Shown: piece by piece, positions 26,383-57,342 of the stretch
Layout: every line of letters starts with the position of its first letter
Numbering within the stretch: the stretch's first letter is position 1
IMG/VR virus record: IMGVR_UViG_3300042519_004024
Location: 149,925-213,924 of that record
Length of the DNA stretch: 64,000 nucleotides
Direction: 5' to 3' (one strand)
The notes under the pieces: generated by a model
What the model saw: only the letters and a program-made list of their open reading frames with translations
The model's database searches: none
Told to the model about the DNA's origin: nothing
Program-made: the position numbers and the translations under genes

Positions 26383-27258
26383 TTAAACTTCTTTTTTTTC
26401 TCCTCCTTTAGTTAAATATAATCTTATAGGTTTTTTTTCATATTCTTTTTCTACAAAATCTTTAATCTTTTCCATATTTCTAGGGTCATCATCTGAAAAA
26501 CCAATAATTGGGATTATTTCTTGGTTGATAACATCATTTTTAAAATAACTCTTCTTTCCAATTTCATTAGCCAACTCTATACAATATGAAACAAATTTTC
26601 TAATTGCAATTATTTTACCTTCTTCGGGACTCGCAGCACTACCCTTACCAAAAGTAACAGGTTCAAAACGACATAAATCAAGATACTCCATTATTATGTC
26701 TTTATCATTAAAATTTAAATTAACCGATTCATCAATTGGGTTATCTGCCCAATTTCTATATGTCTTTAAAGAATTAACGACTTCTTTACTATTAATACCA
26801 TTATGATTGGATAGTATATAATTAAGGACAGCTTCTTTTAATGTTTCAGGATTATGTCCCCTTGCTGTGATAATTGCAAATACAGAACCACCATTTATAC
26901 ACTCAACAAAATCATTCCAAGAAGGTCCTGGACTTGCCGACATTGCATCAATAATAAATCTCTTATCCCCTTTAATACCAAAATTTCTAAAAGGATCAGT
27001 TGCATAACCAACAACAGTTGTACCTTTATATGAAAAAGGTTCCTCACCTATTTGGTGTCTATGTTCCGCAAAATCTTCGGTAGACATAGGGATTTCTTCT
27101 TCATTTTCTGTCATTAAAATGATTGTAGTTGGCATAAAAACGATGTTGTCGTCCCAGTCAAAACCATAATATTTAGAATCGGGAGTACCTTCGGCGGTTA
27201 TCCCCTCATTAATATTTCTACGGTTAACATAGTTTAATACATGTTTTTTAATATCCAT
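26383..27258 (-). CDS. HAD-superfamily phosphatase with N-terminal leader
   Basis: Motifs I FDWDDNI, II IITARGH, III K (EEGK), IV FSDDD. Confidence 0.7.
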   Translation of the reverse strand: MDIKKHVLNYVNRRNINEGITAEGTPDSKYYGFDWDDNIVFMPTTIILMTENEEEIPMSTEDFAEHRHQIGEEPFSYKGTTVVGYATDPFRNFGIKGDKRFIIDAMSASPGPSWNDFVECINGGSVFAIITARGHNPETLKEAVLNYILSNHNGINSKEVVNSLKTYRNWADNPIDESVNLNFNDKDIIMEYLDLCRFEPVTFGKGSAASPEEGKIIAIRKFVSYCIELANEIGKKSYFKNDVINQEIIPIIGFSDDDPRNMEKIKDFVEKEYEKKPIRLYLTKGGEKKEV

Positions 27259-27395
27259 TATTTTTGAAGTTTTGACAAAAGTTTTTCAAGTTGTTTTTCG
27301 GTGATTATTATATTTTGTTTTTTAACCGAAAATGTTTTAGGACTTTTTTGATTGTCTCCAATAGATTCTTTAATAAGTTTTTTCTCTATTTTCAT
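27258..27395 (-). CDS. Unannotated 45-aa basic protein
   Basis: MKIEKKLIKESIGDNQKSPKTFSVKKQNIIITEKQLEKLLSKLQK*; TAATG overlap with HAD gene; TATTTATA at 27409-27416. Confidence 0.75.
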   Translation of the reverse strand: MKIEKKLIKESIGDNQKSPKTFSVKKQNIIITEKQLEKLLSKLQK

Positions 27396-27420
27396 AATTA
27401 TTTTATTTTATAAATATTAA

Positions 27421-27444
27421 GTGGGGAATATTTCTACTCCCCAC
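27421..27444 (-). terminator. Stem-loop after tail sheath
   Basis: GTGGGGAGTA-GAAA-TATTCCCCAC, 10-bp stem, weak U-tract. Confidence 0.65.
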
Positions 27445-27459
27445 ATTTTTATTTTTTAA

Positions 27460-30400
27460 TTATACATCATCAAAAGATGCTCCTGTTGGTGTAATAACGA
27501 ATTCGATATCAATGTATTCTAATGCTCTTGTAGGTTTTAAGAAAATTTTACCTGTTAAAGTATTTGAATCCAAATCTTCAGGAGTGTTTGATACTGTCAC
27601 ACGGAAATCTATCAAACCTCTATCTCTTCTGATTCCATCTAATATTGGGTTAACTGAATCCAAGAAGTCTTGTCTTACTTTGTTATCGTTTTGTTCGAAT
27701 AGTAATCTAATAGCCACTGCTGAAATCAACTTACGTGCTTGTAGTAACAATCTTCTAACGTTAATTCTATCAAGTGCAGACTCTCTAATTTGTAAAGTTT
27801 TGTTACCCCAAATCACTGTACCAACATCAGAGAAAGTTGCGATTGGGTTAATTCTACCTTTATAAAGTGTGTCTCTATCGTCTTGTGTCAATTTACGTCT
27901 TGCTCTAATTGCGTTTACCAAACCTCTTGTGTAACCTGCAGATGCGAACCAAGGGAATGCGATATTGTCTGTCAAAGCTAAGTTCTTAACAACTTCAGAA
28001 GTTGGTGGAATGTATATTTGTGTATTGTTAACCGAATCTCTTGTTAAAATCCAAGGGTAATAAGTGGCGGTATAGTTAGAGTCTATTCCTGTTGCTTCTA
28101 AGTTATCTACCGTCTGTTGAGGGAAAATTAACCCTTCCTCAATATCGTTATATGTTGGTAAAAACAAATCAAAGTCAGGTGTAGTACAGATATAAATAGA
28201 GTCCGCTCTATCAGTTTCAATCATATCAATAGCGTCCTCAACAAGATTTGAGTTATTAACATAATCAATACCAGGTGTTGCAAATACATTTATGTTTGTT
28301 GCTTCAGGGTTAGCAAAAGTACTTTGTCCCCATTTGTATGCGTAAAAGTCAGTATTTGCCCAATTTTCTTGGTTTGGTCCTGAAATCGCTTTAAATGCTC
28401 CCCAACCCGTTGCGGTAGGATAAGTTATACTTGCTTCTGCACCATATTTAAATCCTGTTTGTCCTAATGCGAATGAATCTGAATTTGTTCTATATTCTCT
28501 ATATATGTCCCATCCATCAAAACCACCATAAGCCATTACCGTAAATTTACGAGTATTAAGTCTATAATATGGACTTGAACTATCTGTAGGTTCAGAGTTA
28601 AATGACCCGGCACCTACTTCAAACGCCGACTGTCCTGATGTTACATAACCATTTGCGATTGTTACAACAGTTGCTCCGCTATCCATGTGGAAACCTTTTG
28701 TTAAATAACCCCAAGCCATACCTGTGGTATCAGTACCTAAATTTGCAGGTAACTGCTTTCCTTTGTATTCAAAGAAATCGTAATCAATTCCTGATATATT
28801 AGAAATACCTAAGTATGCCTTTCTTGGATTTTCACCACTTGAAATAACAGGGTTGTCACCTCCGTTAGATGAACCAAAAGGTGGGTTATACACAACGTCA
28901 CCAGGTTTGAAATATTTAGTTTTATATACTAAGAATGGTGGTGTTGCATTTGCGTATTCTCTTGAGATAAATCCTTCAAAACCACAAGGTAGTGCGTCTA
29001 TCGGGGCTTCATCACTCATTTCTAACATTACGTATTTAGACTTAACTTGGTATTCTCCGTTTGATGTTCCTATCTTATTTGCTACGTAATTATTTTGACT
29101 TGGGTCTAATGAACAATTAGTGAAACTTTCAATAACTCTTGGGTTTTGATCGGTATCATAAAAATCTCTAATAAATACGTCAAACGTACTACTATTAAAT
29201 GATATATTACCTATAGACATTTTTACAAGTCTATTAGCTGCGTTACCGTCAGAAATTAAAACAAACTTAAATAATTTATAAACTTTATTACCTCTAAGTT
29301 CTGAAACTAAATACGGTGTTTCAGGTGTTTGATATTGTTCTAAATAGAAACCTATTGAGTCGGTATCTAATGATCTCGCTCCTGGTAATTCGATAATATC
29401 ACAGTCTAATCCTCTAATTCTACCTAATCTATATCCACTTGTTAACAAACTAGTATACGTCTCCTCGACAAATAAAGGAACCTCATTTCTGTCTTTACCA
29501 AAATTACTTCTACCAAATACTTTAGAAATAAAGTTCTTATCAGTAGATAACATTGATGTTTGGAATTCAAAATTGTCCCCGTCATAGGTTACCCCTGAAA
29601 TAAGGAATGGTGAGTATGGGTTTTTAGTAACCGCAGAATAAGAACCTGTACAAATCATTTGTACATCAGTTGTACCCGTTACTTCATAATTCGGTCCTGC
29701 TTGTGTTGCACTGTAGTTAGATATACCTCTTGATCTTAAAGTTGCAACAACTAAATCATCATAATCTAAATAAGGCGTACCTGAATAGTTTGTGTTGTAA
29801 AAAACACAAGAACCTGAGAAATTACCTCCTGATCCCGATAGTGTGTTTACCGCGGCACCAAAACCTTGTCCGTAATAACTACTTACATCGTTTACTTGTG
29901 AGTAATTAAACAATGCGTAATACCAAGCATCGTTAGTAGATGCTGATAAGTTAGCCAAAGATAGATTAACATTATTAACCCCAAAGTTTTCAGTGTATGC
30001 AGTAATAGTACCCGTACCATTAAGTGTTGTACCCGTTACTAAGTTAAATGTTCCTGCACTAACAGTACCCCAAAAGACTGCCGATGAACCTGAAGAAGGT
30101 GAGCCAACGGCAAATAAATTTACTTGGTTTGATATATAAGTTCTTAAATCTTGATCAATAGTTGATGTACCACCATTAAATTCAGTATATGTATTATAAA
30201 AATTATTATTTACATTAATAATACCAGGGACTGACATATTATATGCAATATTTGAACTTGTTCCTGTTGTTCCTGTAAATGTTAATACTGTGGATGATAC
30301 TCCTGTTGCTGCGATTGTTGCCGGATTAACGTTACCTATTGTCGTTATTGACCAAGAAGGTCCTGCGTCATATCCTGATAAACCAAGAACTCTTGTAACA

Positions 30401-30675
30401 AATAATTGATTCGATTGTTGCAAATATGCCTTTGTAATATACGCTAATTCATATTTAGGTATTTGTGTATTAACAAATTTTTCAGGACTAGTTCCTCCAA
30501 AATATACTTGGAACTCGTCAAAATTAGTTATGAATATTGGTTCAAACGCCGGACCCTGAAGAGTTTCTCCAGCCAAACCTAAAGTTGTTACACCTACACT
30601 TTGTGCAACAAAAGTTAAATCTCTTTCTGACGTATAAACCCCAGGTGAAACGAAAACTTTGTTTGATGATGCCAT
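27460..30675 (-). CDS. Contractile tail sheath (gp18-like), enlarged to 1071 aa
   Basis: FVSPGVYTSERD; PWFASAGYTRG; LYKGRINPI; WGNKTLQ..SALDRINVRRLL; KPTRALEYIDIEF. Confidence 0.95.
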   Translation of the reverse strand: MASSNKVFVSPGVYTSERDLTFVAQSVGVTTLGLAGETLQGPAFEPIFITNFDEFQVYFGGTSPEKFVNTQIPKYELAYITKAYLQQSNQLFVTRVLGLSGYDAGPSWSITTIGNVNPATIAATGVSSTVLTFTGTTGTSSNIAYNMSVPGIINVNNNFYNTYTEFNGGTSTIDQDLRTYISNQVNLFAVGSPSSGSSAVFWGTVSAGTFNLVTGTTLNGTGTITAYTENFGVNNVNLSLANLSASTNDAWYYALFNYSQVNDVSSYYGQGFGAAVNTLSGSGGNFSGSCVFYNTNYSGTPYLDYDDLVVATLRSRGISNYSATQAGPNYEVTGTTDVQMICTGSYSAVTKNPYSPFLISGVTYDGDNFEFQTSMLSTDKNFISKVFGRSNFGKDRNEVPLFVEETYTSLLTSGYRLGRIRGLDCDIIELPGARSLDTDSIGFYLEQYQTPETPYLVSELRGNKVYKLFKFVLISDGNAANRLVKMSIGNISFNSSTFDVFIRDFYDTDQNPRVIESFTNCSLDPSQNNYVANKIGTSNGEYQVKSKYVMLEMSDEAPIDALPCGFEGFISREYANATPPFLVYKTKYFKPGDVVYNPPFGSSNGGDNPVISSGENPRKAYLGISNISGIDYDFFEYKGKQLPANLGTDTTGMAWGYLTKGFHMDSGATVVTIANGYVTSGQSAFEVGAGSFNSEPTDSSSPYYRLNTRKFTVMAYGGFDGWDIYREYRTNSDSFALGQTGFKYGAEASITYPTATGWGAFKAISGPNQENWANTDFYAYKWGQSTFANPEATNINVFATPGIDYVNNSNLVEDAIDMIETDRADSIYICTTPDFDLFLPTYNDIEEGLIFPQQTVDNLEATGIDSNYTATYYPWILTRDSVNNTQIYIPPTSEVVKNLALTDNIAFPWFASAGYTRGLVNAIRARRKLTQDDRDTLYKGRINPIATFSDVGTVIWGNKTLQIRESALDRINVRRLLLQARKLISAVAIRLLFEQNDNKVRQDFLDSVNPILDGIRRDRGLIDFRVTVSNTPEDLDSNTLTGKIFLKPTRALEYIDIEFVITPTGASFDDV

Positions 30676-30762
30676 TTTTTTCTGTATTTTTTATTTATGG
30701 TTTTATTTTTTTATATAAATACCTTGAAAAAAACCAAAAAACTTTACATTTAAATAATATTT

Positions 30763-30807
30763 ATTATGTGGTGAGAAAAAATTCTGCCTTTTTTCTACCC
30801 ACATAAT
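30763..30807. promoter_or_regulatory. Long imperfect palindrome (candidate operator) between sheath and RHH genes
   Basis: ATTATGTGG-TG-AGAAAAAA-TTCTGCC-TTTTTTCT-AC-CCACATAAT; 17 of 19 positions pair. Confidence 0.6.
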
Positions 30808-30816
30808 TTATTAAAA

Positions 30817-30972
30817 ATGAAAAAGATAAAAAACATAAAAATATCAGTAGAAACACACCAAATCCTAAAAAACTATTGTGATGACAATAATTTAAAGATG
30901 TATAAATTTTTAGAATCTTTAATTAAAAAAAATTGTGAAAAGAAAAAGGATATATATGGTGATGCTATTTAA
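30817..30972 (+). CDS. Unannotated 51-aa ribbon-helix-helix-like DNA-binding protein
   Basis: MKKIKNIKISVETHQILKNYCDDNNLKMYKFLESLIKKNC...; beta-strand (KNIKIS) plus two helices, CopG/Arc-like pattern. Confidence 0.75.
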   Translation: MKKIKNIKISVETHQILKNYCDDNNLKMYKFLESLIKKNCEKKKDIYGDAI

Positions 30973-32198
30973 ACTAAGTACGCTACCGTTTTTATTGATG
31001 ATGTTTTTGTGATATCATCTTTATACGCCTGTATTAATAATGTATCCCCATCATTAATTTGTATCACATCTAAGTCATCACCAACATAGTTACCATTGAT
31101 ATAAACTGAGTACCCCGATGCGCATGACGAACCTTGAGTTAATGTTCCTCCAGTAACGCCACTAAAATTAGGTACTGTTCCTCCTTTAACACATATTGTG
31201 TTTGAGTTTCCTGAGTTTAAAGATAATGTTATTGTATTTCCTGAACAATTGGTGTATGTTAAATTAGTATTTGTTATTGCACTATATGTTGTGTTATAAC
31301 AATTAATTAAATTTTCTTGTCCTGTAACTTTTAAATCTGCAGTGTATCTAAATACTTCACTTAACTGAGTTACACCACTTAAAAAAGTGATGTCCAAGTC
31401 AAAAAAGTTAGGTTTTGGTGGATTATTAATTACTTTTTTACCTCTTACTTTAGTGTCTACTTCAAACATAGTCACTTGTCTTGAAATTGCGGGTGATATT
31501 TGGAACTCTTCTTCATCAATTAATAATCCTTTCATTGTGAATTTATAATTCGCTATATAGTATTTTCTTTTTTCTAAGTCTTTAGCCGATTCATCCGAAA
31601 CGTCATCTAATATAATTGGTATGTAATGTCCTTTAATTTGTTGGTACGCCTGTTTCGATGTGAATGTTTGCATAACAATTTTATTAAATTGATTGATTTC
31701 TCTCATTCTATTACAGAACAATTTAACGTTATAAGTTATGTCAACGGGAATTGGTTGTGGTATTTTATAAACATCAGCCCCCTTTCTTTGTCCATCCCAA
31801 GTGGGTACGGTATAGTAAAAAAACTGTCTTCTATTTGGTATGTTAGCCGCTCCACCTTGGAATGTCCCATATTTTACTTCGGGCATTCTTACTGTAGCAA
31901 TAAACGGTAAAGAAATGTTTTTATCTAAATCTTGAAAATTCCAAGTCTCAACAAATTGACTCCAATTCTGATTGGTTATTATCTTATCAATTGTTGGAAC
32001 ATTTTTTTCACTAACAACTAGCTTTAATCTATCCTTTACAAAGTCTATCATTCCAAGATCCAAATCTTCATGTAAAACTCCTTTAGGTAAAAAAGTGCCG
32101 TCATCGGTAATATCATCAAGCATTTGTTGTCTTCTTTCCCTACCAACTTTTTCAGGAATTAAAGGTAAATGTTTTTTTATTTTTTTTGGTAACGCCAT
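30969..32198 (-). CDS. Tail completion/terminator protein (gp15-like) with C-terminal extension
   Basis: LPFIATVR, IPQPIPVDITYNVKLFC..MREINQF; adjacent to sheath and head-closure genes. Confidence 0.65.
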   Translation of the reverse strand: MALPKKIKKHLPLIPEKVGRERRQQMLDDITDDGTFLPKGVLHEDLDLGMIDFVKDRLKLVVSEKNVPTIDKIITNQNWSQFVETWNFQDLDKNISLPFIATVRMPEVKYGTFQGGAANIPNRRQFFYYTVPTWDGQRKGADVYKIPQPIPVDITYNVKLFCNRMREINQFNKIVMQTFTSKQAYQQIKGHYIPIILDDVSDESAKDLEKRKYYIANYKFTMKGLLIDEEEFQISPAISRQVTMFEVDTKVRGKKVINNPPKPNFFDLDITFLSGVTQLSEVFRYTADLKVTGQENLINCYNTTYSAITNTNLTYTNCSGNTITLSLNSGNSNTICVKGGTVPNFSGVTGGTLTQGSSCASGYSVYINGNYVGDDLDVIQINDGDTLLIQAYKDDITKTSSIKTVAYLV

Positions 32199-32200
32199 TA

Positions 32201-32716
32201 TTATATTCCTTTAAATTCGTTATCATTAACAGGAGCTCCTATTATTGAACGATAAAATGGTTTGTAACCACCATAAGTATGTTTATTATCTGATAGTACA
32301 CGACCATCATTTACTACTGAATAATATCTAACCCTCGTTTCCGTTTCGTAATACCCTATGTAATCACCATAGTTAATATCAACACCTAAATTATCCAATT
32401 CTTTTTGGTAAACACCAACCTTAACATTACCAGGCTCTGTTTGTGATAATTTTGATGATCCGTAATCCGCATTTGTAGGAGCCTCTACCTGAACATATCC
32501 TTTAAATTCTACCGGAGGTAAGAATTGTATTGCATTCTCTAACGCTTCCCCATAAACATCGTCATTATTTGTTCGTTGTCTATCAACTCTGTATAAAACT
32601 AAAGTAAAATTCATATCTCCACCAAGCCATTCCTCACCCATAGAAATGTCTAAGTCAAAATCTTCTTCAGAGAAGAATTTGTTTAATCTAGTAATTGGAA
32701 CTTTATTTTGTGTCAT
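32201..32716 (-). CDS. Head closure / neck protein (gp14-like)
   Basis: LYRVD...DDVYGEA....FLPPVEF; position next to gp15-like gene. Confidence 0.6.
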   Translation of the reverse strand: MTQNKVPITRLNKFFSEEDFDLDISMGEEWLGGDMNFTLVLYRVDRQRTNNDDVYGEALENAIQFLPPVEFKGYVQVEAPTNADYGSSKLSQTEPGNVKVGVYQKELDNLGVDINYGDYIGYYETETRVRYYSVVNDGRVLSDNKHTYGGYKPFYRSIIGAPVNDNEFKGI

Positions 32717-32775
32717 ATAATATAAATACTTTGATTGATTTTTTATTAATATTTACTATTTTTATTTATAATATA

Positions 32776-34539
32776 ATGGAAGAATTAATTTCAAAAACTC
32801 CCGAAACAAGGGCTCTTCAACTATTAGACGAATATGAAGGGTCAAATAACTATATCCTGTCGTTAAAACACAAAAAACAAAATAGTAAATCATTTACTCC
32901 CACAAGATCACAAGCAGAATACATAATCAACTTTCATGGAAGAACCCCAAAAGTGGCAAAAAAATGGGTAAAGCTGGATGCTTACTTTGGAAAAAAGATG
33001 ATGGAAGATAAAATGTACACAAAAGAACCATCAGAAATTTACGTTGAGAAGTTGTTGGTTGAAAAAGATAAATCATATCATATTTGGGGTAAAATATTTT
33101 CAGGTGATACTATACACGATTTCTGGGTTCCTAAATCTGCCCTTATTAAAGATAACGAAGTAAAAAATGTCGTTATTGAATACTCAAAGTATGATCATAG
33201 ATCACCTATGGAACACCAAAAAGAGGCTATCGAAAAACTTGTAAGAAACAAAAAGTTTATTTTGGCTGATGATATGGGACTTGGAAAAACTACATCAACA
33301 ATTATTTCTGCATTAGAGACGGGAGCAAAAAAAATATTAATTGTTTGTCCAGCATCTTTAAAAATAAATTGGCAACGTGAAATTGAAAATTATTCAGACA
33401 GAACCATTTATATTGCAGAAGGTAAAAAATTTTCAAGTGAACACGATTTTGTAATAATTAATTATGATATTTTAAAAAACTTTCACGACCCAAAAAAGAA
33501 AGACGAATCCATCATTTTAAATTCTAAATTTGATTTAGTTATTATGGATGAAGCCCATATGATATCAAACCCACAAGCACAAAGAACAAAAATAGTTAAT
33601 GACTTATGTGATAAGGTTGAAAGGGTTTGGTTACTAACAGGAACTCCGATGACATCAAGACCAATGAATTATTATAATCTTTTAAGTTTAGTTGAAAGCC
33701 CCGTTGCGGCAAATTGGATGGCTTACGCAAGAAGGTACTGTAACGGATTTCAATTTAGTGTAGGTAAAAGAAAAGTATGGAACGTAACAGGGGCATCTAA
33801 CTTAGATGAGTTGAGAGAACGAACACAATCTCACATTTTAAGAAGATTAAAAGAAGATGTTTTAGATTTACCTGATAAAATTATCACACCTGTTTATTTG
33901 AGACTAAAGTCTAAGGACTACGAAGAACTTATGGGTGAGTATTTTAATTGGTATGATAATAACTCAGAAGAGTCTTCATCTTTAACTATTCAGTTTGGTA
34001 AATTAATGAAAGTTAGAAAAGTAATTGCTGAAGAAAAAGTAAAAAATACAATTGAATTGGCTGAAAATATTATTGAACAAGGAAAAAAAGTTATCATATT
34101 TACAAATTTTACTGACACCTTAAGAACCATTTATGAACATTTTGGAAAACAGGCGGTATATTTAGACGGTAGTTGTTCAAAACCTCATAGACAAAAAGCA
34201 GTGGACGATTTTCAAGAAAACGATAAAATAAAAGTTTTTGTTGGTAATTTAAAGGCTGCGGGTGTGGGTATTACTTTAACATCTGCAGAAGCAGTAATCA
34301 TGAATGATTTATCATTTGTTCCTGCAGAACATGCACAAGCAGAGGATCGATCACACAGAATCGGACAGAAAAAATCAACGTCAGTTTATTATCCATTATT
34401 TGAAAACACAATAGAAGGTGCAATTTATGATATTTTAAATAGAAAGAAAAAAATCATATCAACAGTAATGGGAGATGATATGATGGACGACGCATCTTCA
34501 ATTGAAGAAATGTTAAATATGATTTCTAATAAGAGGTGA
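32776..34539 (+). CDS. SNF2-family helicase (SMARCAL1/HARP-like)
   Basis: LADDMGLGKT, VCPASLKINW, DEAH, LTGTP, GVGITLT, QAEDRSHRIGQ; likely ATG at 32776 rather than 32695. Confidence 0.92.
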   Translation: MEELISKTPETRALQLLDEYEGSNNYILSLKHKKQNSKSFTPTRSQAEYIINFHGRTPKVAKKWVKLDAYFGKKMMEDKMYTKEPSEIYVEKLLVEKDKSYHIWGKIFSGDTIHDFWVPKSALIKDNEVKNVVIEYSKYDHRSPMEHQKEAIEKLVRNKKFILADDMGLGKTTSTIISALETGAKKILIVCPASLKINWQREIENYSDRTIYIAEGKKFSSEHDFVIINYDILKNFHDPKKKDESIILNSKFDLVIMDEAHMISNPQAQRTKIVNDLCDKVERVWLLTGTPMTSRPMNYYNLLSLVESPVAANWMAYARRYCNGFQFSVGKRKVWNVTGASNLDELRERTQSHILRRLKEDVLDLPDKIITPVYLRLKSKDYEELMGEYFNWYDNNSEESSSLTIQFGKLMKVRKVIAEEKVKNTIELAENIIEQGKKVIIFTNFTDTLRTIYEHFGKQAVYLDGSCSKPHRQKAVDDFQENDKIKVFVGNLKAAGVGITLTSAEAVIMNDLSFVPAEHAQAEDRSHRIGQKKSTSVYYPLFENTIEGAIYDILNRKKKIISTVMGDDMMDDASSIEEMLNMISNKR

Positions 34540-34550
34540 TATTTATAGTT

Positions 34551-35270
34551 ATGATATTTAAAAACTTTAATCAAAAAATAACCCTTTTAGAAACAAAATT
34601 AAAAACACATTCGTTTTCAAATGAATTGTTAATTACTGAAATTAAAAAAATTTCAATAGAAAAATTACCTTATGAGTTTGATGATTTAGATATGTTTATT
34701 GACGGTGAAACTATGAGAACTCACTATAATAAACATTACAAAGGTTACGTTGAAAAATTAAATTCTGAATTAGAAAAAATAAAAGGTAAAGATTTAGATT
34801 TAGAAGAGATTGTAAGTAGTATCACAAAATTTAACACGAAAGTTAGAAATAACGGTGGTGGAGCATTTAACCACGCACTATTTTGGAAAATGTTAACACC
34901 TAAAAAAACAAAATTAGAAAATCCTTTATTATATAAAATAGAATCAACATTTGGTTCATTTGAAAAATTTAAACAAAAATTTGAAGAGGAAGCAAAATCA
35001 AGATTCGGTTCTGGTTGGGTTTGGTTAGTAATTACTAAAGCAAATAGATTAAAAATTATAACCACCGCAAATCAAGATAATCCATTAATGTTAAAAGGTA
35101 GTAATAAAGCGTACCCACTATTAGGATTGGATTTATGGGAACATGCATATTATTTAAAATATAAAAACGAAAGAGATAGATACATCCATAATTTTTGGAA
35201 AGTAGTTAATTGGGATTTTGTTTCCGATTTATATTCAACACAAGTAAAATTAAATAAAGTTAATCAGTAA
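34551..35270 (+). CDS. sodA: Fe/Mn superoxide dismutase (Mn-type signature) with ~30-aa N-terminal extension
   Basis: KLPY, HYNKHYKGY, NNGGGAFNH, FGSGWVWL, NQDNP, DLWEHAYY; ATG 34551 lies 3 nt after TATTTATA. Confidence 0.9.
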   Translation: MIFKNFNQKITLLETKLKTHSFSNELLITEIKKISIEKLPYEFDDLDMFIDGETMRTHYNKHYKGYVEKLNSELEKIKGKDLDLEEIVSSITKFNTKVRNNGGGAFNHALFWKMLTPKKTKLENPLLYKIESTFGSFEKFKQKFEEEAKSRFGSGWVWLVITKANRLKIITTANQDNPLMLKGSNKAYPLLGLDLWEHAYYLKYKNERDRYIHNFWKVVNWDFVSDLYSTQVKLNKVNQ

Positions 35271-35293
35271 GATATTTATATAAAAAATATCAT

Positions 35294-36415: not shown

Positions 36416-36419
36416 TTTT

Positions 36420-39649: not shown

Positions 39650-39713
39650 AATGTTATAAATTTAAGTTTGGTCTATTAGCTGTCACATAAGGGCGACATT
39701 TACCTTCGTCTTA

Positions 39714-39742
39714 AATATAAGAGTAAAATGTACTCTTGTCAA
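39714..39742 (-). promoter_or_regulatory. Sigma70-like promoter of DNA polymerase with palindromic spacer
   Basis: TTGACA-N17-TATATT; AAGAGTA/TACTCTT inverted repeat spans the spacer. Confidence 0.65.
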
Positions 39743-40092: not shown

Positions 40093-40150
40093 AGAATAAA
40101 ATTATTTTTTCTTATTTTCTAATAAATGTTTTATTTGTTTTATTTAAATA

Positions 40151-40738: not shown

Positions 40739-40757
40739 ATTATTAGTATTTTATTTT

Positions 40758-44576: not shown

Positions 44577-44630
44577 CTTTTTATTTTATAAATAGTTTTT
44601 TATTGTAATAATTCTTTAAAAAAAATTAAT

Positions 44631-45503
44631 TTAGTTATATATCCTTATTTCTACAGGTAAATTTGAAAAATTTGGTGTTGATAACAACGTACCGTCATAA
44701 AGAAATATGTTTATTGAAATAAAATTTGATGTGGATTTTTGTCCTGTACATATGTAAAGTACCCCACCACCATTAATGTTTTCAACAGATATTAATATAT
44801 TAGAGGAGGTAAACGCACCTGTCTTAGTTGCTCTAATTATACCATTATTAGGGTTACTCCACTGAATATCATTTGGACTTACACCACTACCGTCTCCTAT
44901 AGTATTTTCTAATTGTGTTACAGTAAATATCCCACCACTTAATGAAACTAACGCTTTATAAATTGTGTAATTAACGGAAGGTGTTGTTGTAATACCAGTA
45001 ACGTTAAATGTTCCGCCTGTGGTATTTGTAAATGTTATTGTACCTGCAGAAAATGTTCCACCTGTAATATATACGTCTGTTAATCCCGTATAAAACCCTG
45101 TCACATTGAAAGTACCTCCAGTGTTATTTGTGAATATTGTTGTTCCGTTTGAATAGGTACCTCCTGTCACTCTTATGTCTGTTGGTAAATTCTGATATGT
45201 TGTTGCAGAAATTGTTCCATTTACAGTTAATCCTGTAACAGTATTAATTGTTGCACTAAAATTATTATTATAGTTGTCCGTAATTGTAAAAGTATTAAGG
45301 TTATTGTATGTAAACCCTGTAACCTTATTTATCGTAACAGATTTAGTACCTCCTGTTGGGTTGGTTATATTAATTGTTCCGTTTGAATATGAGAACCCAC
45401 TTACACCTAATTCTTGTAAGTAGTATAAATTCATATCCATATCATAAAATGATAGTTTTAAATTTTTTGCGTTTGGTCCGTATTGTCTTGTAACTAATGG
45501 CAT
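44631..45503 (-). CDS. Thr/Gly-rich fibre-like structural protein
   Basis: 34-aa repeat D..[VI]TGGT[YF]S.GT..FTN.TGGTFNVTG x2 plus degenerate copy. Confidence 0.65.
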   Translation of the reverse strand: MPLVTRQYGPNAKNLKLSFYDMDMNLYYLQELGVSGFSYSNGTINITNPTGGTKSVTINKVTGFTYNNLNTFTITDNYNNNFSATINTVTGLTVNGTISATTYQNLPTDIRVTGGTYSNGTTIFTNNTGGTFNVTGFYTGLTDVYITGGTFSAGTITFTNTTGGTFNVTGITTTPSVNYTIYKALVSLSGGIFTVTQLENTIGDGSGVSPNDIQWSNPNNGIIRATKTGAFTSSNILISVENINGGGVLYICTGQKSTSNFISINIFLYDGTLLSTPNFSNLPVEIRIYN

Positions 45504-45527
45504 TTTTTTATTTAATAAATATAAAGT

Positions 45528-47465
45528 TTATTCAAAATAATTAGGTTCAATATAATCAGCGTCCACATAACCGTTAGGTATTTCTGAATAACAGTTGGGA
45601 CACCAAAAATCAAATAAATCAAATCTATTTCGTAATATTCTAAAATTGTGTTGTATTTGAGGCGTAGTTAACGGTTCAACATACATCCTAAATTGAGATA
45701 TTCCTCCCATAAATGTTCCTCCAAATGTTTGTTCCATTAATATATTTGTGGTTAAAGAAGACAAAGATGTTGCTGACAATATATTATTTGGGAATAATTC
45801 AGGATCTTGAATATAAGGTCCGTTAGTCATAGTACTTGAGGAGAAAATTAAATGGTTGTGTAATCCTTGAGTCCCACCACCAAACGAAAAATTAAATGGA
45901 ACCCCTATTTGTTTTTCTTTTTCAGTATTTAATTCTCTTGGAATTATCTCTTCAAAATTTTCAATAACCATATATAGATATCCGTTTACATAAATTTTAA
46001 GCAATCCCATTCTATACCAAGTATCATCAAACCATTTCCTATCAAATTCAATTTTAAATATTTGACTTTCTTTTGGTGAACCTATGTGTGTTTGTGGTGG
46101 CATTATTAGATTATATGACGCCCCATCAAGTATTGATTGAAATGTTCTAATTCTTAAATCGCCCAATCCCCCTAAATGTAATAAGTCACAGTCTTCTATT
46201 GTTGTATATCTTTCGAAAACCGCACTTACCATAACCCATCTATCTTCAGTATCCGCAGAACAAGGAAGATTACAAACTTCATATATTGGTGGTCCACAAA
46301 CTTCAGTTATAGTGTACCCTGTTTGAAAAGTAACGCCAGTAACTTCACAAGTTCCTGTAGTTATACAATCTCCCGTAATTTTTAAATATTTTACACAGAT
46401 ACTTGGATTTACGGGACACCCACTAAATCTTATTGACATTGCGTTTGATAGTACGTCAAATTTAGGATCAATAGGTGGTTGCGGGACAATTTCACCACAA
46501 GCAGGTTGACCACAAGTACACCCAATATTATGTACCACTGTAGTAGCACTTTGTGGGTATACATAAACACAATTAGAATTAGTCACTCCCGTATCAGAAC
46601 ACGAACATGTTTTTAAACTTTTAGAAGTTGCCGTGACTCTTGTATATGTTGATGCCGTTGAAGGTTGCCCCTCAGCAATATGGTAATATTTATTTTCAGC
46701 TCTTGTACCAAAAAAGAAAAATGTACCAGCATTGTCAGGATATCTGTCATTAAGATACTCGTTTATATTTTTATCTATCGGGTATTGATCAACATTTCTT
46801 GGTTTTAAAATCATTTCAGCCGTCCACCCCTTATTTACTCTTTCAGGAAAAACTTCATAATTGTAACCAAATAATTTGTAAAATCCTTGATAGAAACCTC
46901 CGTACAATTGTTGATAATAACCTATGTTTGGTTCGTTTTTTGACAACACATTATATATAGTATTTTTAGGTATGCCTGAAAATCTAATATTCGGTGATTG
47001 GGTGTACCCCGTAACCAAATTCATTTTAAATCTTCTATCTCTATAGTACGGATCAAACTTATAATCGTTTCTTATACCCATAGAATAGTATAATGTTTGT
47101 CCAGACATTTTAGTATACAAACCATTATCGGTACCAACTAAACCAACATCACAAGCCCCTGTAAATGCCGAGTAACAACTTAAATCGTCATTATTTGGGT
47201 TATAATAATTTTTAGACACTAAAGTAGAACCTGAAGAATATTCATTAAAATCAATAACTAACTGTAATGAAGAATCCGAAGAACTTAAGTCCATGTAAAT
47301 TGGGAGTCTATTACCATCATTTTCAGCAATAATATCCGTAGAGAACACAACTTCTTCGTCGTAATCCCTTTCATCAGAAGCCAAAGTTAAATCAAAATAT
47401 TGTCCATAATTTAATTTAGCTCGGTATCTTGGGTAATAATAACTATTTAAATTTTGACTAGGCAT
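45528..47465 (-). CDS. Cys-rich structural protein, possible LamG/ConA-like fold
   Basis: GWTAEMILK, LKIYVNG, FMGGISQFRMY..PL..PQIQHNF; >20 Cys; late motif upstream. Confidence 0.55.
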   Translation of the reverse strand: MPSQNLNSYYYPRYRAKLNYGQYFDLTLASDERDYDEEVVFSTDIIAENDGNRLPIYMDLSSSDSSLQLVIDFNEYSSGSTLVSKNYYNPNNDDLSCYSAFTGACDVGLVGTDNGLYTKMSGQTLYYSMGIRNDYKFDPYYRDRRFKMNLVTGYTQSPNIRFSGIPKNTIYNVLSKNEPNIGYYQQLYGGFYQGFYKLFGYNYEVFPERVNKGWTAEMILKPRNVDQYPIDKNINEYLNDRYPDNAGTFFFFGTRAENKYYHIAEGQPSTASTYTRVTATSKSLKTCSCSDTGVTNSNCVYVYPQSATTVVHNIGCTCGQPACGEIVPQPPIDPKFDVLSNAMSIRFSGCPVNPSICVKYLKITGDCITTGTCEVTGVTFQTGYTITEVCGPPIYEVCNLPCSADTEDRWVMVSAVFERYTTIEDCDLLHLGGLGDLRIRTFQSILDGASYNLIMPPQTHIGSPKESQIFKIEFDRKWFDDTWYRMGLLKIYVNGYLYMVIENFEEIIPRELNTEKEKQIGVPFNFSFGGGTQGLHNHLIFSSSTMTNGPYIQDPELFPNNILSATSLSSLTTNILMEQTFGGTFMGGISQFRMYVEPLTTPQIQHNFRILRNRFDLFDFWCPNCYSEIPNGYVDADYIEPNYFE

Positions 47466-47475
47466 TCTTTTTTAA

Positions 47476-47503
47476 GATAAATACTTTGTTGCGAGTATTT
47501 ATA
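47476..47503. promoter_or_regulatory. Back-to-back late promoter motifs driving divergent operons
   Basis: AGTATTTATC on minus (47476-47485) and AGTATTTATA on plus (47494-47503). Confidence 0.65.
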
Positions 47504-47516
47504 GGTAAAAGACTCT

Positions 47517-48260
47517 ATGAAAACATATAAATACTCTACTAAAGAAAGAGCAGAAAGAGTTTCTAAAACATTAGGTTGTTCAGGATTTCACTACCACAAT
47601 GAGGATGGTAAAAGAAAATACATGCCATGCAAAACTCATGAGATATTTAAAACTAAAACTGAAAAGGGTAAAAAAACTAAAGAAGAAGAAGTAACTGAGT
47701 TGGTTGATGATGACGGTACGTGGACATCATCAAGTATCCCAATCCTTGATCCAGCATCAAGTATGCAAGGATCAACATTCACCGATAAGATAGTTCCAGC
47801 TGCAAGAAACCCAAGAGATCCATTATTAAGAGGTTGGTATGGTTACTATGGTGAATCTGAAATTAAAGAGGTAGATATGGAAGACGCTTTTGGTTTTGAT
47901 AAAACAAAATTCATGGACTACAAAGAAACCGTAAACTATTACCAAAAAAAATTAAAACTAGATAAAGAAGACGCAGTAGGAAGAGCAATCCAACAAGGAA
48001 AAAAACCAAATCTTCATAAAAGAGCACCTAAAAAAATTAAAAATAAAAAAAACTTTATAGATAGATTAATACTAAAAGAAAAAGGTATTGATGAAAATGA
48101 AGACATTATTGAAGATTTAGTATTAACAAATAAAAGTGATAATGAAAATATTGAGATAACAGATACTCTTAAAAGAAATGTTTCATCATTAAAGAATATG
48201 GCAAAAAAACAAGGGATATCTTTAAATCATTTAATTAAATTAATTAAAAATGAACAGTGA
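47517..48260 (+). CDS. Hypothetical late protein with N-terminal Cys/His metal-binding motif
   Basis: AERVSKTLGCSGFHYH...YMPCKTHE (DUF3721-like pattern). Confidence 0.6.
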   Translation: MKTYKYSTKERAERVSKTLGCSGFHYHNEDGKRKYMPCKTHEIFKTKTEKGKKTKEEEVTELVDDDGTWTSSSIPILDPASSMQGSTFTDKIVPAARNPRDPLLRGWYGYYGESEIKEVDMEDAFGFDKTKFMDYKETVNYYQKKLKLDKEDAVGRAIQQGKKPNLHKRAPKKIKNKKNFIDRLILKEKGIDENEDIIEDLVLTNKSDNENIEITDTLKRNVSSLKNMAKKQGISLNHLIKLIKNEQ

Positions 48261-48702
48261 TTTATACAATAATACAGCAGTATTGCCCGATACTTTGTTA
48301 AAACATCTAAATGATTGTTTTAACTCTGCACAAGGAGATTCAAATACTGAAGGATATAATAGAAATCAAGAATTAAGACAAACAAAGTCAGCAACATACC
48401 AACAAATAAAGAGAATAAAAAGTTGGTTTGATAGTTATAATGGTAATAAAGAAGATGCTCCTTTTATTTTAAATGGGGGTGATAGGATGAAAAATTGGTG
48501 TGATGAGGTTTTAAAGGTTTGGAGAAATAATTTAGATGGGGGTAAAAAAATAAAGAGTGATGCCGGTATGCAAAATCAATACAACGATTCACATGAAAAA
48601 AATAATTTTAATATGAATGCGTCACATTCATCTACCGCAGATAAATTATCTGTTAGTGAAGAAGTTATTAAAATAAATAAATTAATTAAAAAAATAATAT
48701 AA
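48250..48702 (+). CDS. Hypothetical, probable head-associated protein
   Basis: TYQQIKRIKSWF...LNGG..MKNW; C-terminal VSEEVIKINKLI. Confidence 0.6.
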   Translation: MNSDLYNNTAVLPDTLLKHLNDCFNSAQGDSNTEGYNRNQELRQTKSATYQQIKRIKSWFDSYNGNKEDAPFILNGGDRMKNWCDEVLKVWRNNLDGGKKIKSDAGMQNQYNDSHEKNNFNMNASHSSTADKLSVSEEVIKINKLIKKII

Positions 48703-48992
48703 TGTCAGTACAATCAGATAAGTTAGATTTTAGCCAACCTGAAAATAAGTTGTCTCAAATAGCAGAAGAACAAAGAAAAAAATTATTTGCAAGAAATGAT
48801 TTTAAAGAAGAAAACAAATACTCTTCAGTACATCCTGACGCGCTAGCAGATGGTGATAAAATTGGTAGAGGGACGGGTAATTTTGATCAGTACGATTTAA
48901 AGGCTGGAACATCCACCGATATCTTTGAAAGAAAAGATGATTTAAAGTCAAATAAATACTCGTCTAATAACCCATATTATACTGTTAAATGA
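48702..48992 (+). CDS. Hypothetical protein
   Basis: 96-aa ORF, TAATG/ATGA coupled to neighbours. Confidence 0.7.
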   Translation: MSVQSDKLDFSQPENKLSQIAEEQRKKLFARNDFKEENKYSSVHPDALADGDKIGRGTGNFDQYDLKAGTSTDIFERKDDLKSNKYSSNNPYYTVK

Positions 48993-49390
48993 AACTTTTA
49001 AATAATTTAAAAAATATTATTTCAGAGGCTGCGGCAATTTCAGATATCCAAGACTCAATTAAAAATAAAAAAGTTGTAATCATTTATTATGACGGTGATG
49101 ATAATGGAGGTAAGGGGTATAGAAAAATCGAACCCGTTTGTTTTGGGTTAAGTAAAAGGGGTAATCAAGTATTAAGAGCATGGGAAATTGAAGGTTCTTC
49201 TTGGTCTGAAAAAAATGAAGGGAATTATTTACCTGGATGGAGGTTCTTTAGAACAGATAAAATATTTACTTACAAACCGACATTCGATAACTTTACAGAT
49301 GTAAGACCTAATTACAACCCTAACGGGGATAAATCTATGGATAGGGTTTTTATAAACGCAAAATTCGATAATGAAGAAAATATAGCATAA
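48989..49390 (+). CDS. Stand-alone WYL-domain protein
   Basis: IQDSIKNKKVVIIYY...RKIEPVCFG...VLRAW...WRFFRTDKI. Confidence 0.8.
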   Translation: MKLLNNLKNIISEAAAISDIQDSIKNKKVVIIYYDGDDNGGKGYRKIEPVCFGLSKRGNQVLRAWEIEGSSWSEKNEGNYLPGWRFFRTDKIFTYKPTFDNFTDVRPNYNPNGDKSMDRVFINAKFDNEENIA

Positions 49391-49391
49391 T

Positions 49392-57341: not shown

Positions 57342-57342
57342 A

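What the first reader, a model, noticed from the sequence alone, without database searches (positions are those of the whole stretch)
26383..49390. Enzymes carrying I-x-E leader peptides: SOD, HAD phosphatase and WYL protein look tagged for capsid packaging
Seen: short amphipathic N-terminal extensions ending in I-x-E just before the folded domain: SOD (MIFKNFNQKITLLETKLKTHSFSNELLITE|IKK..KLPY), HAD (MDIKKHVLNYVNRRNINE|GIT), WYL (MKLLNNLKNIISE|AAA), Pro-rich protein 8951 (MSIDNKILEELRRFNNINSYINE|QDA) and the 45-aa ORF (KLIKE|, IITE|). All are downstream of the late TATTTATA motif. Established: T4 prohead protease gp21 cleaves after [I/L]-x-E, and T4 internal proteins carry a removable N-terminal capsid-targeting sequence. 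Inference: a packaged payload of antioxidant, end-healing and nucleic-acid-sensing proteins, matured in the head and possibly injected.
Basis: partly seen in the sequence, partly recalled or inferred. Interest (0 to 1): 0.75.

Follow-up and report, generated by a model that had tools for sequence, protein, structure and literature searches.

The report
Cleavable capsid-targeting-like leaders on phage enzymes
A lake-water relative of phage T4 puts short N-terminal leaders ending in a hydrophobic-x-Glu junction on many unrelated proteins, which looks like an expanded version of T4's system for loading proteins into the capsid, but no cleavage or packaging has been shown.

Summary
The quoted sequences and coordinates are correct. 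I-x-E alone means little: 31% of this genome's 296 ORFs have it at residues 8-45, and [IL]-x-E occurs in 51%.

The context gives partial support.
- The record is a 214-kb fragment of a lake-water T4-like jumbo phage and stops just before the head genes.
- Five near-complete relatives (sheath 65-84% identical) encode a T4 gp21-type protease (Peptidase_S77), and a gp23-type capsid protein and gp20-type portal were confirmed in one of them (G003).
- In more than 100 homologues each of SOD, the HAD-like protein and the WYL protein, [I/L/V]-x-E sits at one fixed place. That place is the junction between the leader and the fold. P2 varies freely.

The larger finding lies upstream of the window. Forty-eight of 296 ORFs begin with one of five stereotyped leaders, for example MKxIIRLTESDLxRIVxRVIKE, on otherwise unrelated proteins. 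Relatives carry 23-47 such ORFs. The conservation is at the peptide level, and 81% sit in units headed by the TATTTAT motif that also heads structural genes. In the window only the 45-aa ORF belongs to these families.

Best reading (about 0.45): these are propeptides like T4's capsid-targeting sequence, removed by the prohead protease. Cleavage, packaging and injection are all untested.

The parts
34551..35270 (+). Fe/Mn superoxide dismutase with a 30-aa N-terminal leader (34551-34640) ending in L-I-T-E, followed by IKKISIEKLPY. An alternative GTG start at 34536 overlaps the stop of the helicase gene.
   Evidence: Pfam Sod_Fe_N 2.5e-22 and Sod_Fe_C 9e-41. PDB SODs align only from residue 33-36. 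I/L-x-E lies 9 aa before LPY in 113 of 114 homologues. G003 has IISE and G002 has FLTE at this place on otherwise unrelated leaders.
26383..27258 (-). 291-aa HAD-like (DDDD acid-phosphatase-like) protein between the tail tube and sheath genes. The 18-aa leader (27205-27258) ends in I-N-E, followed by G.
   Evidence: No Pfam or PHROG hit. There are 2026 metagenomic homologues, none with a telling name. [L97/I17/V4]-x-E-G is present in 118 of 119 listed homologues. Invariant residues are E18, G19, D34, D36, T131, K215 and D256-258. The AF2 model has pLDDT 78, with the leader helix 3-14 at pLDDT about 50. VIA-align Z is 7.9 to AphA and the top matches are mostly HAD proteins.
27258..27395 (-). 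45-aa ORF whose stop overlaps the start of the HAD-like gene (TAATG). It contains LIKE|S near its N-terminus and an E-type stereotyped leader peptide (NIIITEKQLEKLL) at its C-terminal end.
   Evidence: It is the only ORF in the window that matches a leader HMM (E-type, 1.5e-6). It is conserved upstream of the HAD-like gene in G001 and G003.
48989..49390 (+). 133-aa stand-alone WYL-domain protein. The 13-aa leader (48989-49027), MKLLNNLKNIISE, is followed by AAA.
   Evidence: Pfam WYL is only 0.0097 for this copy. Many homologues carry PF13280. Foldseek top matches are the WYL domains of PafBC, BrxR, DriD and CapW, probability 1.0. [I/V/L]-x-E lies at residues 11-13 in 110 of 110 homologues. 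Leader helix 2-12 has pLDDT about 50 and is followed by a break. One non-orthologous look-alike N-terminus, MKLLFSLKNIVINE, is at G000 107784-108323.
8295..8951 (-). 218-aa Pro-rich, acidic protein. The 23-aa leader (8883-8951) ends in I-N-E, followed by Q and the Pro-rich stretch.
   Evidence: Sequence. Orthologues have INE|Q, IKE|Q, LNE|Q and ISE|Q. No Pfam family. It is the second gene of a unit headed by TATTTAT at 9208-9214.
27410..27416 (-). TATTTAT promoter-like motif after a terminator-like hairpin. It heads the unit formed by the 45-aa ORF and the HAD-like gene.
   Evidence: The same motif precedes the sheath gene (30715-30721) and the tube gene (26302-26308).
34540..34546 (+). TATTTAT motif 4 nt upstream of the SOD ATG.
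47496..47502 (+). TATTTAT motif heading the operon 47517-50021, which contains the WYL gene.
27460..30675 (-). Tail sheath gene (context). It was used as the marker that tied the window to near-complete relatives.
   Evidence: Its C-terminal part resembles T4 gp18. It is 65-84% identical to the sheath of G001-G005.

Best explanation
The N-terminal extensions of SOD, the HAD-like protein, the WYL protein and the Pro-rich protein, and the 45-aa ORF, are most likely propeptides. Each would be cut after the Glu of a conserved [I/L/V]-x-E junction by this clade's T4 gp21-type (Peptidase_S77) prohead protease. That would mean the proteins are built into the prohead, as T4's internal proteins and Alt are.

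They would be the less stereotyped members of a much larger set. About 15% of this phage's ORFs start with one of five interchangeable 10-22-residue amphipathic leaders on unrelated cargo proteins. These leaders behave like a greatly expanded version of T4's capsid-targeting sequence.

Shown here:
- The leaders exist, are translated, and are conserved as peptides.
- The junction motif is conserved in position.
- Relatives encode the protease, and G003 also a T4-type capsid protein and portal.
- The genes share the promoter-like motif of the structural genes.

Inferred:
- That the protease prefers a hydrophobic P3 residue.
- That it cuts these junctions.
- That the proteins are in the head.

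Pure speculation: that the proteins are injected, and what they do in the host.
For: 1. Machinery.
- Peptidase_S77 is above the Pfam cut-off in 5 of 5 near-complete relatives, and in 6 of 10 further leader-bearing fragments.
- The G003 protease aligns to T4 gp21 (5JBL) at 2.6e-16 and keeps the LNHP and GVSSRG motifs.
- In G003 the capsid protein matches Gp23 at 3e-73 and the portal matches Portal_T4 at 6e-74. The gene order TerL, portal, small core-like genes, protease, scaffold-like gene, capsid protein matches T4.
- This record ends where G003 continues into the head genes.

2. Capsid protein. VIKE23, HIKE44 and LINE60 precede the part that aligns with mature gp23. The cultured Flavobacterium phage immuto has a parallel ...ENQAKQIVSE|ANV.

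3. Junction motif.
- It is invariant, with free P2, in 113 of 114 SOD, 118 of 119 HAD-like and 110 of 110 WYL homologues.
- It survives when the leader is shortened or replaced. Examples are HAD-like MNMKLIIVE|G and the DHH-like protein MRKIISE|SGIR against MKIIITESQLKQLIKE|SGIR.

4. Cutting SOD after E30 would leave IKKISIEK-LPY, which is the usual N-terminal length of bacterial SODs.

5. Stereotyped leaders.
- 48 of 296 ORFs here, and 47, 36 and 23 in three relatives.
- They lie almost always at residues 1-12.
- None of the 47 cargo parts is paralogous to another.
- Eleven type-A proteins share only their first 22 residues.
- Conserved residues use many synonymous codons.
- One homologous cargo carries a B leader in one genome and an E leader in another.
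- Whole cellular domains (DUF2237 from residue 20, a P-loop kinase from about residue 30) sit behind the leader.
- 152 of 154 leader ORFs contain [ILV]-x-E at residues 5-30, against 42% of other ORFs.

6. Expression. 39 of 48 leader ORFs, against 104 of 248 others, lie in units headed by TATTTAT. The motif also heads the sheath, tube, tape-measure and baseplate genes here, and the protease and scaffold-like genes in G003.

7. Literature.
- T4 gp21 removes short N-terminal peptides from IPI-III and Alt.
- A capsid-targeting sequence of about 10 aa carries foreign proteins into the core (PMC9958956).
- The T4, phiKZ, 201phi2-1 and SPN3US proteases all cut after Glu (PMC5694885).
Against: - There are no proteomic, cleavage or virion data for this phage or any close relative. 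The nearest cultured phages have capsid proteins only 40-41% identical.
- The protease and capsid genes are not on this record.
- The bare motif is common. A position-conserved N-terminal [ILV]-x-E occurs in 24.5% of ortholog families, including replication proteins.
- The SOD, HAD-like, WYL and Pro-rich leaders do not match the stereotyped leader HMMs.
- In about a quarter of SOD homologues the 'leader' is an internal linker behind an extra HExxH-like domain.
- S77 proteases differ at P3, which is small in phiKZ-like phages. The hydrophobic P3 assumed here is therefore only an assumption.
- Roughly 45 different packaged proteins per virion would be a lot. Some cargos, such as a P-loop kinase, look like ordinary cytoplasmic enzymes.
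- Complex prediction of the protease with the HAD-like leader gave no answer.
Confidence: 0.45

Rival explanations
1. The extensions are ordinary, uncleaved N-terminal helices or linkers that serve the proteins themselves, for example in oligomerisation, regulation or docking. The [ILV]-x-E is just a conserved helix end. The enzymes act in the infected cell's cytoplasm as late-expressed auxiliary genes and are not packaged.
For: - The motif is frequent by chance, and is position-conserved in 24.5% of ortholog families, including DnaB and a DnaJ-like protein.
- Four of the five leaders are unique rather than shared tags.
- In about 30 of 114 SOD homologues the segment is an inter-domain linker.
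- The listed homologues are 65-96% identical overall, so N-terminal conservation is partly expected.
Against: - P3 and P1 are invariant while P2 varies freely. The motif also survives leader shortening and replacement.
- The leader helices are low-confidence elements detached from the folds.
- This rival does not explain about 48 unrelated proteins sharing stereotyped leaders.
Confidence: 0.3
2. The leaders are recognition tags for a different phage machine. Candidates are the ClpA/C-like AAA+ ATPase encoded beside the head genes in relatives, a chaperone, or an export or localisation system. Under this reading they direct unfolding, turnover or delivery somewhere other than the capsid.
For: - A 681-aa Clp-like ATPase lies next to the head module in G003 and G002.
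- The tags are short amphipathic N-terminal peptides on diverse cargo.
- Cargo includes cell-wall hydrolase and peptidoglycan-binding domains, which act outside the cytoplasm.
Against: - All five leader families contain [ILV]-x-E. That fits a Glu-specific S77 protease better than an unfoldase tag.
- The leaders are not hydrophobic signal peptides.
- No test links them to the ATPase.
Confidence: 0.15
3. The extensions are artefacts of start-codon choice and are not translated.
For: - The ORF calls here are crude.
- SOD has an upstream GTG and an ATG close together. The TATTTAT motif lies only 4 nt from that ATG.
Against: - There is no ATG between the leader start and the LPY motif of SOD.
- The leaders are conserved as amino acids, with synonymous changes, across hundreds of homologues.
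- The leader ORFs begin with ATG directly downstream of the promoter-like motif.
Confidence: 0.03

Closest known systems
T4 capsid-targeting sequence (CTS) on internal proteins IPI-III and Alt, removed by the prohead protease gp21
   Same: - A short N-terminal propeptide of 10-20 aa sits on proteins that share nothing else.
- It ends in hydrophobic-x-Glu.
- The clade encodes a gp21-type S77 protease, and G003 a gp23-type capsid protein, a gp20-type portal and a T4-like head gene order.
- The tagged genes are accessory and vary between relatives.
   Different: - T4 tags a handful of proteins. Here 23-48 ORFs per genome carry a tag.
- There are at least five distinct leader families of 12-22 aa rather than one 10-aa sequence.
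- Similarity of sequence to the T4 CTS was not tested.
- Cleavage and packaging are proven in T4 (PMC9958956) and untested here.
Propeptide-bearing ejection and inner-body proteins of phiKZ-like giant phages (phiKZ, 201phi2-1, SPN3US)
   Same: - A large number of head proteins (about 50).
- A related protease that cuts after Glu.
- Paralogues with identical short N-termini (SPN3US gp53 and gp54) that the authors compare with the T4 CTS (PMC5694885).
   Different: - The phiKZ-like cleavage motif is A/S/G-x-E and the propeptides are often longer than 100 aa.
- Here P3 is I/L/V and the leaders are short and stereotyped.
- This clade's head genes are much closer to T4's.
Polymorphic toxin or effector systems with a conserved N-terminal trafficking module and variable C-terminal payloads
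   Same: A shared N-terminal module on many unrelated, fast-changing cargo domains. There is at least one case of homologous cargo with a different leader type.
   Different: Those modules are folded domains that recognise secretion systems. Here the module is a helical peptide of 10-22 aa in a phage, and no secretion system is implicated. This is an analogy only.
Cleavable amphipathic presequences of mitochondrial Mn-SOD
   Same: An Fe/Mn SOD carries an N-terminal amphipathic extension that is absent from bacterial SODs. Removing it would give the canonical N-terminus.
   Different: The targeting system and the protease are unrelated. This is an analogy only.

Membership tests
T4-type CTS / gp21-processed head proteins | The phage encodes a gp21-type (Peptidase_S77) prohead protease | tested here: inconclusive
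   It is not found on this 71%-complete record, which stops just before the head genes. It is present above the Pfam cut-off in 5 of 5 near-complete relatives with a 65-84% identical sheath and in 6 of 10 further fragments.
T4-type CTS / gp21-processed head proteins | A short N-terminal peptide shared by otherwise unrelated proteins | tested here: met
   Met for the 48 stereotyped-leader ORFs. In the window this holds only for the 45-aa ORF, and weakly for WYL. The SOD, HAD-like and Pro-rich leaders are unique to their own families.
T4-type CTS / gp21-processed head proteins | Hydrophobic-x-Glu at the junction of propeptide and mature protein | tested here: met
   Present at a fixed position in 113 of 114 SOD, 118 of 119 HAD-like and 110 of 110 WYL homologues, and in 152 of 154 leader ORFs. 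The bare motif is also common by chance.
T4-type CTS / gp21-processed head proteins | Actual cleavage after the Glu by the prohead protease | not testable with these tools
   Complex prediction of the G003 protease with HAD-like residues 1-45 gave 'no answer'. Proteomics or an in vitro assay is needed.
T4-type CTS / gp21-processed head proteins | Presence of the protein in proheads or virions | not testable with these tools
   There is no cultured close relative; the best capsid-protein identity is 40-41%. No virion proteome was found.
T4-type CTS / gp21-processed head proteins | Sequence similarity to the T4 CTS itself | not tested
Any resemblance is from memory only.
Fe/Mn superoxide dismutase | Both Pfam domains (Sod_Fe_N and Sod_Fe_C) above the cut-off | tested here: met
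   79.5 and 138.5 bits. Best PDB match 1.4e-57 over residues 36-230.
HAD superfamily phosphatase | Match to a HAD sequence profile | tested here: not met
   No Pfam or PHROG family at the thresholds used. None of the 120 listed homologues has a precomputed Pfam domain.
HAD superfamily phosphatase | Rossmann-like HAD fold with the four catalytic motifs (DxD, S/T, K, DD) | tested here: inconclusive
   Invariant D34, D36, T131, K215 and D256-258 fit the motifs. VIA-align top matches are AphA, Ceg4, MDP-1 and Lem4, all HAD proteins, at Z 6.7-7.9, which is a middling score. Foldseek was not significant.
WYL domain | WYL profile match and Sm-like WYL fold | tested here: met
   This copy scores only 16.3 bits against a cut-off of 21.8. 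Many 70-80% identical homologues carry PF13280. The model matches the WYL domains of PafBC, BrxR, DriD and CapW with probability 1.0 and rmsd 2-4 A. It has no HTH domain, so it is a stand-alone WYL domain.

The most novel reading that the evidence does not exclude
A widespread clade of freshwater T4-like jumbo phages of about 290 kb uses a set of interchangeable N-terminal capsid-targeting tags, each ending in a site for the prohead protease. With these tags it loads dozens of unrelated and fast-changing proteins into the capsid, about 6-16% of its ORFs. The cargo includes SOD, a phosphatase-like enzyme, a WYL ligand sensor, cell-wall hydrolases and a kinase. This would be a hyper-expanded arsenal of internal or ejected proteins, far beyond T4's three internal proteins and Alt.
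Probability: 0.35. Interest if true: 0.85.

Novelty: new variant of a known kind. Interest (0 to 1): 0.68.

Why it matters
If the leaders are capsid-targeting propeptides, a sequence signature would let packaged (possibly injected) proteins be read directly from metagenomic phage genomes. Virion proteomics is not possible for such uncultured phages.

It would also show that T4's small internal-protein system can grow into a modular cargo system of about 50 genes. That would point to a large pool of candidate host-takeover or anti-defence proteins, most of them of unknown function.

The tags could serve as tools for loading foreign proteins into capsids, as the T4 CTS already does.

If the leaders are not cleaved, an unexplained shared N-terminal tag on about 15% of a phage proteome still needs an explanation.

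Tried and rejected
- Protease, capsid protein, portal and terminase on this record: none found. The record is truncated, so this is not absence.
- DNA and protein searches of GenBank phages: no close relative. The type-A leader protein gave no hit.
- Leader HMMs against the flagged proteins: only the 45-aa ORF matches. SOD, HAD-like, WYL and Pro-rich do not.
- Conservation of the motif among 3-4 relatives as evidence: rejected as weak, because 24.5% of ortholog families show it.
- [ILV]-x-E enrichment in head proteins of G003. Only the 242-aa protein between portal and protease stands out (13 observed against 6.4 expected, z 3.1). The scaffold-like protein is weak (z 1.65).
- Foldseek for the HAD-like model: not significant.
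- Protease-leader complex prediction: no answer.
- An apparent swap of a D leader for an A leader on a DUF2237 protein. It turned out to be a shared C-terminal module, not orthologous cargo.
- Literature search for the leader strings: no paper found.
- Metatranscriptome contigs cover pieces, including the junction of the 45-aa ORF and the HAD-like gene. They cannot show transcription, transcript starts or timing.


Full report
WHAT THE WINDOW IS

The window is the last 64 kb of a 213,924-bp IMG/VR virus record (30.8% GC, estimated 71% complete). It encodes:
- a contractile tail: sheath 27460-30675, tube 25782-26270, tape measure, a baseplate hub-like protein, and two virion proteins of more than 2,000 aa;
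- fibre-like proteins;
- replication genes;
- a block of glycosyltransferase genes.

The C-terminal part of the sheath resembles T4 gp18. The nearest GenBank phages are only about 30% identical. The same DNA is present in at least 20 lake and freshwater metagenome runs.

No gp23-type capsid protein, gp20-type portal, large terminase or Peptidase_S77 was found on the record.

CHECKING THE OBSERVATION

All five quoted N-termini are present as written.

The SOD extension is real.
- Pfam Sod_Fe_N starts at residue 41 of the GTG ORF.
- Solved bacterial SODs of about 200 aa align from their residue 2-5 to residue 33-36 of the ATG ORF.

The motif alone does not discriminate.
- I-x-E with E at residues 8-45 occurs in 31% of 296 crude ORF calls (shuffled 21%).
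- [IL]-x-E occurs in 51% (shuffled 37.5%).
- 37 of 151 ortholog families (24.5%) keep an [ILV]-x-E at the same N-terminal position across relatives. These include DnaB, a DnaJ-like protein and a RuvC-like protein.

The excess of the motif at N-termini over shuffled sequences led to the main result.

A MUCH LARGER PATTERN UPSTREAM OF THE WINDOW

Listing the N-termini of all ORFs showed dozens that start with a few stereotyped peptides:
- type A, MKxIIRLTESDLxRIVxRVIKE;
- type B, MK(N/Q/H)LI(K/R)KILKEE;
- type C, MNLQEHIRKVLREE;
- type D, MNLQEQISRIQSMMGL;
- type E, MKIIITESQ(Y/L)..L.

Profile HMMs built from these give the following counts of leader-bearing ORFs:

| Genome | Leader-bearing ORFs | All ORFs |
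|---|---|---|
| G000 (this record) | 48 | 296 |
| G003 | 47 | 354 |
| G001 | 36 | 337 |
| G002 | 23 | 392 |

Properties of the leaders:
- The motif sits almost always within the first 12 residues.
- Eleven type-A proteins align only over their first 22 residues.
- Among 47 leader ORFs of this genome, no two have similar post-leader parts.
- Conserved leader residues use many synonymous codons, for example Leu TTA/CTT/CTA, Ser TCA/TCT/TCC/TCG and Arg AGA/CGT/CGA/CGG. Selection is therefore on the peptide, not the DNA.
- Only 5 of the 48 have any Pfam or PHROG match. These are two with peptidoglycan-binding domains, a cell-wall hydrolase, a P-loop kinase and DUF2237.
- Where a known domain is present, it is complete and starts right after the leader. 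DUF2237 profile position 2 falls at residue 20, and the kinase profile start at about residue 30.
- Leader ORFs are accessory. 19% are conserved in all three relatives, against 47% of other ORFs.
- One homologous cargo (31% identity, 4e-14, residues 20-121) has a B leader here and an E leader in G002.
- The type-A pattern alone hits more than 593 places in IMG/VR, many matching only residues 1-25.
- No paper in the library contains these strings.

THE HEAD MACHINERY OF THE CLADE

Five near-complete relatives (281-294 kb, 96-100% complete) carry leader-tagged genes and a sheath 65-84% identical to the window's. All five encode Peptidase_S77 above the Pfam cut-off. So do 6 of 10 further fragments that are 37-82% complete.

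In G003:
- the capsid protein matches Gp23 (3e-73);
- the portal matches Portal_T4 (6e-74);
- the protease matches Peptidase_S77 (5e-25);
- the order TerL, portal, small genes, protease, scaffold-like gene, capsid protein resembles T4.

The protease aligns with T4 gp21 (5JBL, 2.6e-16) and keeps LNHP and GVSSRG. My inference is that these hold the catalytic His and Ser. The natural immuto protease also has LDHPES.

This record's last ORF (MNRTRKKEISL...) matches the G003 gene that lies a few genes before the head module. The protease is therefore most likely on the missing part.

The capsid protein N-terminus is nearly identical in three relatives. It has VIKE23, HIKE44 and LINE60 ahead of the region that aligns with mature T4 gp23. 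Phage immuto has a parallel ...ENQAKQIVSE|ANV.

From the literature:
- T4 gp21 removes short N-terminal peptides from IPI-III and Alt, and 65 residues from gp23.
- A capsid-targeting sequence of about 10 aa carries foreign proteins into the core (PMC9958956).
- The proteases of T4, phiKZ, 201phi2-1 and SPN3US all cut after Glu, but P3 differs between them (PMC5694885).

THE FLAGGED PROTEINS ONE BY ONE

SOD
- The best 114 homologues (68-92% identical) all have an N-terminal extension.
- I (112 homologues) or L (1) sits three residues before a Glu that lies exactly 9 residues before LPY, in 113 of 114. P2 is S, N, T, K or F.
- G003 and G002 have otherwise unrelated leaders that end in IISE and FLTE at the same place.
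- Cutting there would leave an N-terminus of normal SOD length.
- Caveat: about 30 homologues are 313-369 aa, with an extra HExxH-like domain in front. In those the 'leader' is an internal linker.

HAD-like protein
- It has 2026 metagenomic homologues, none with a telling name.
- [L/I/V]-x-E-G occurs at the same place in 118 of 119 listed homologues, with P2 free and leader length varying. Examples are MNIKRHLRRIIE|G and MIRNRKYIVE|G.
- E18 and G19 are invariant.
- The model shows the leader as a low-confidence helix (residues 3-14), followed by coil.
- The HAD assignment rests on two things. The first is the invariant D34, D36, T131, K215 and D256-258. The second is that HAD proteins dominate the VIA-align list at Z 6.7-7.9. 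Sequence profiles and Foldseek do not support it. 'End-healing' has no support.
- Phage immuto has sheath and tube genes adjacent. The unit formed by the 45-aa ORF and the HAD-like gene is therefore an insertion specific to this clade.

WYL protein
- [I/V/L]-x-E lies at residues 11-13 in 110 of 110 homologues, and P1' is mostly Ala.
- The fold matches the WYL domains of PafBC, BrxR, DriD and CapW.
- The leader helix (residues 2-12) is detached from the fold.
- One unrelated ORF of this genome starts MKLLFSLKNIVINE.

Pro-rich protein
- The junction reads INE|Q, IKE|Q, LNE|Q and ISE|Q in four genomes. The function is unknown.

45-aa ORF
- It is conserved in G000, G001 and G003.
- It holds LIKE|S and a true E-type leader peptide.
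- Its stop overlaps the start of the HAD-like gene.

A further clean case outside the window is a DHH-like protein. It has MKIIITESQLKQLIKE|SGIR in three genomes and only MRKIISE|SGIR in G002. The alignment is invariant from the Glu onwards.

EXPRESSION

TATTTAT lies 4-45 nt upstream of the ATG of the sheath, tube, tape-measure, baseplate and fibre genes. In G003 it precedes the protease, the scaffold-like gene and other head genes.
- 39 of 48 leader ORFs lie in units headed by it, against 104 of 248 other ORFs.
- 3.3% of random 80-mers contain it.
- All five flagged genes lie in such units.

Metatranscriptome contigs include the junction of the 45-aa ORF and the HAD-like gene. They prove nothing about timing.

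INTERPRETATION

The best-supported reading is a T4-like propeptide system.
- An N-terminal leader brings the protein into the assembling prohead core.
- The S77 protease cuts after the junction Glu.
- The stereotyped leaders are the clearest candidates for capsid-targeting tags.
- The flagged SOD, HAD-like, WYL and Pro-rich proteins have private leaders but the same junction logic.

I put this at about 0.45, because every step from 'motif' to 'cleaved and packaged' is inference. The rivals are:
- uncleaved functional helices or linkers (0.3);
- tags for another machine, such as the Clp-like ATPase encoded beside the head genes (0.15);
- start-codon artefacts (0.03).

Injection and the roles proposed for the proteins remain speculation.

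NOVELTY

The kind of system is known from T4's CTS and gp21, and from the propeptides of phiKZ-like phages. Three things appear undescribed in what I could search:
- the scale, 23-48 tagged ORFs per genome;
- the several interchangeable leader families;
- the occurrence in an uncultured, widespread lake phage clade.

A cultured distant relative, Flavobacterium phage immuto, has its own small sets of repeated N-termini and an S77 protease. It offers a bench system for testing the idea.

Noticed in passing
G000 genome coordinates 900-119,200 (upstream of the window; loci L001-L006): About 47 ORFs begin with one of five stereotyped N-terminal leaders (types A-E) on otherwise unrelated proteins. 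This became the core of the report.
   Followed up: yes
L004:10388-19888 and L005:123-2201 (G000 70.4-82.2 kb): An array of 23 tRNA genes on the minus strand. Two have odd two-base anticodon calls.
   Followed up: partly
window 26302-26308, 27410-27416, 30715-30721, 34540-34546, 47496-47502, and many more: The TATTTAT motif sits only 4-45 nt from start codons. There is no Shine-Dalgarno sequence, and the spacers are A-rich. This suggests near-leaderless late mRNAs and a host that does not use Shine-Dalgarno sequences, possibly Bacteroidota. A sigma-70-like TTGACA-N17-TATAAT precedes the ORF at 7340-8197.
   Followed up: partly
L001:12797-13288:-, L113:18979-19296:-, L002:11171-11833:-: Several leader-bearing proteins also share a C-terminal module of about 35 aa...GELTE(K/R)CWxGYTQKGMKTMFGKxYPNCVKK. 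The cargo is therefore mosaic at both ends.
   Followed up: partly
Database homologues P0128-P0240 of the SOD at window 34551-35270: About a quarter of SOD homologues are fused to an N-terminal domain of about 120 aa with an HEWxHE(Y/H)Q (HExxH-like) motif. G002 has a related small stand-alone gene at 72310-72702, near its head genes.
   Followed up: partly
G003 165090-167135 and G002 52130-54175 (relatives, beside the head module): A 681-aa ClpA/C-like AAA+ ATPase is encoded next to the head genes. It is a possible alternative reader of N-terminal tags. The assignment is by eye from the N-terminal sequence and was not tested with profiles.
   Followed up: no
L147-L150 (Flavobacterium phage vB_FspM_immuto_2-6A, NC_055915): This cultured distant relative has its own repeated N-termini: MENFDLKKFLVENKLT four times, MKKQILSEQFKRMQxLAGII twice, and MKKSQLRxII twice. 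The second resembles the type D leader.
   Followed up: partly
G001 64957-67734 against G003 157328-159139: The portal ORF of G001 is 925 aa against 603 aa in G003. G001 also has extra ORFs of 740 aa and 247 aa nearby. This suggests an intein or a homing-endonuclease insertion.
   Followed up: no
window 9219-16232 and 16491-22880 (-): Two virion-module proteins of 2,320 and 2,129 aa lie upstream of the tape-measure gene. The second has repeated units of about 55 aa (...YGNTVWYINNDQ...) in its N-terminal third.
   Followed up: no
window 50105-63028 (+): A block of about 13 kb holds glycosyltransferase-, methyltransferase- and sugar-epimerase-like genes together with a dUTPase-like and a PhoH-like gene. 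This is read by eye from the translations and was not profiled.
   Followed up: no
window 27131-27358: Contigs from two riverine metatranscriptome runs cover the junction of the 45-aa ORF and the HAD-like gene. One has 0 differences and the other 9. DNA carry-over cannot be excluded.
   Followed up: partly
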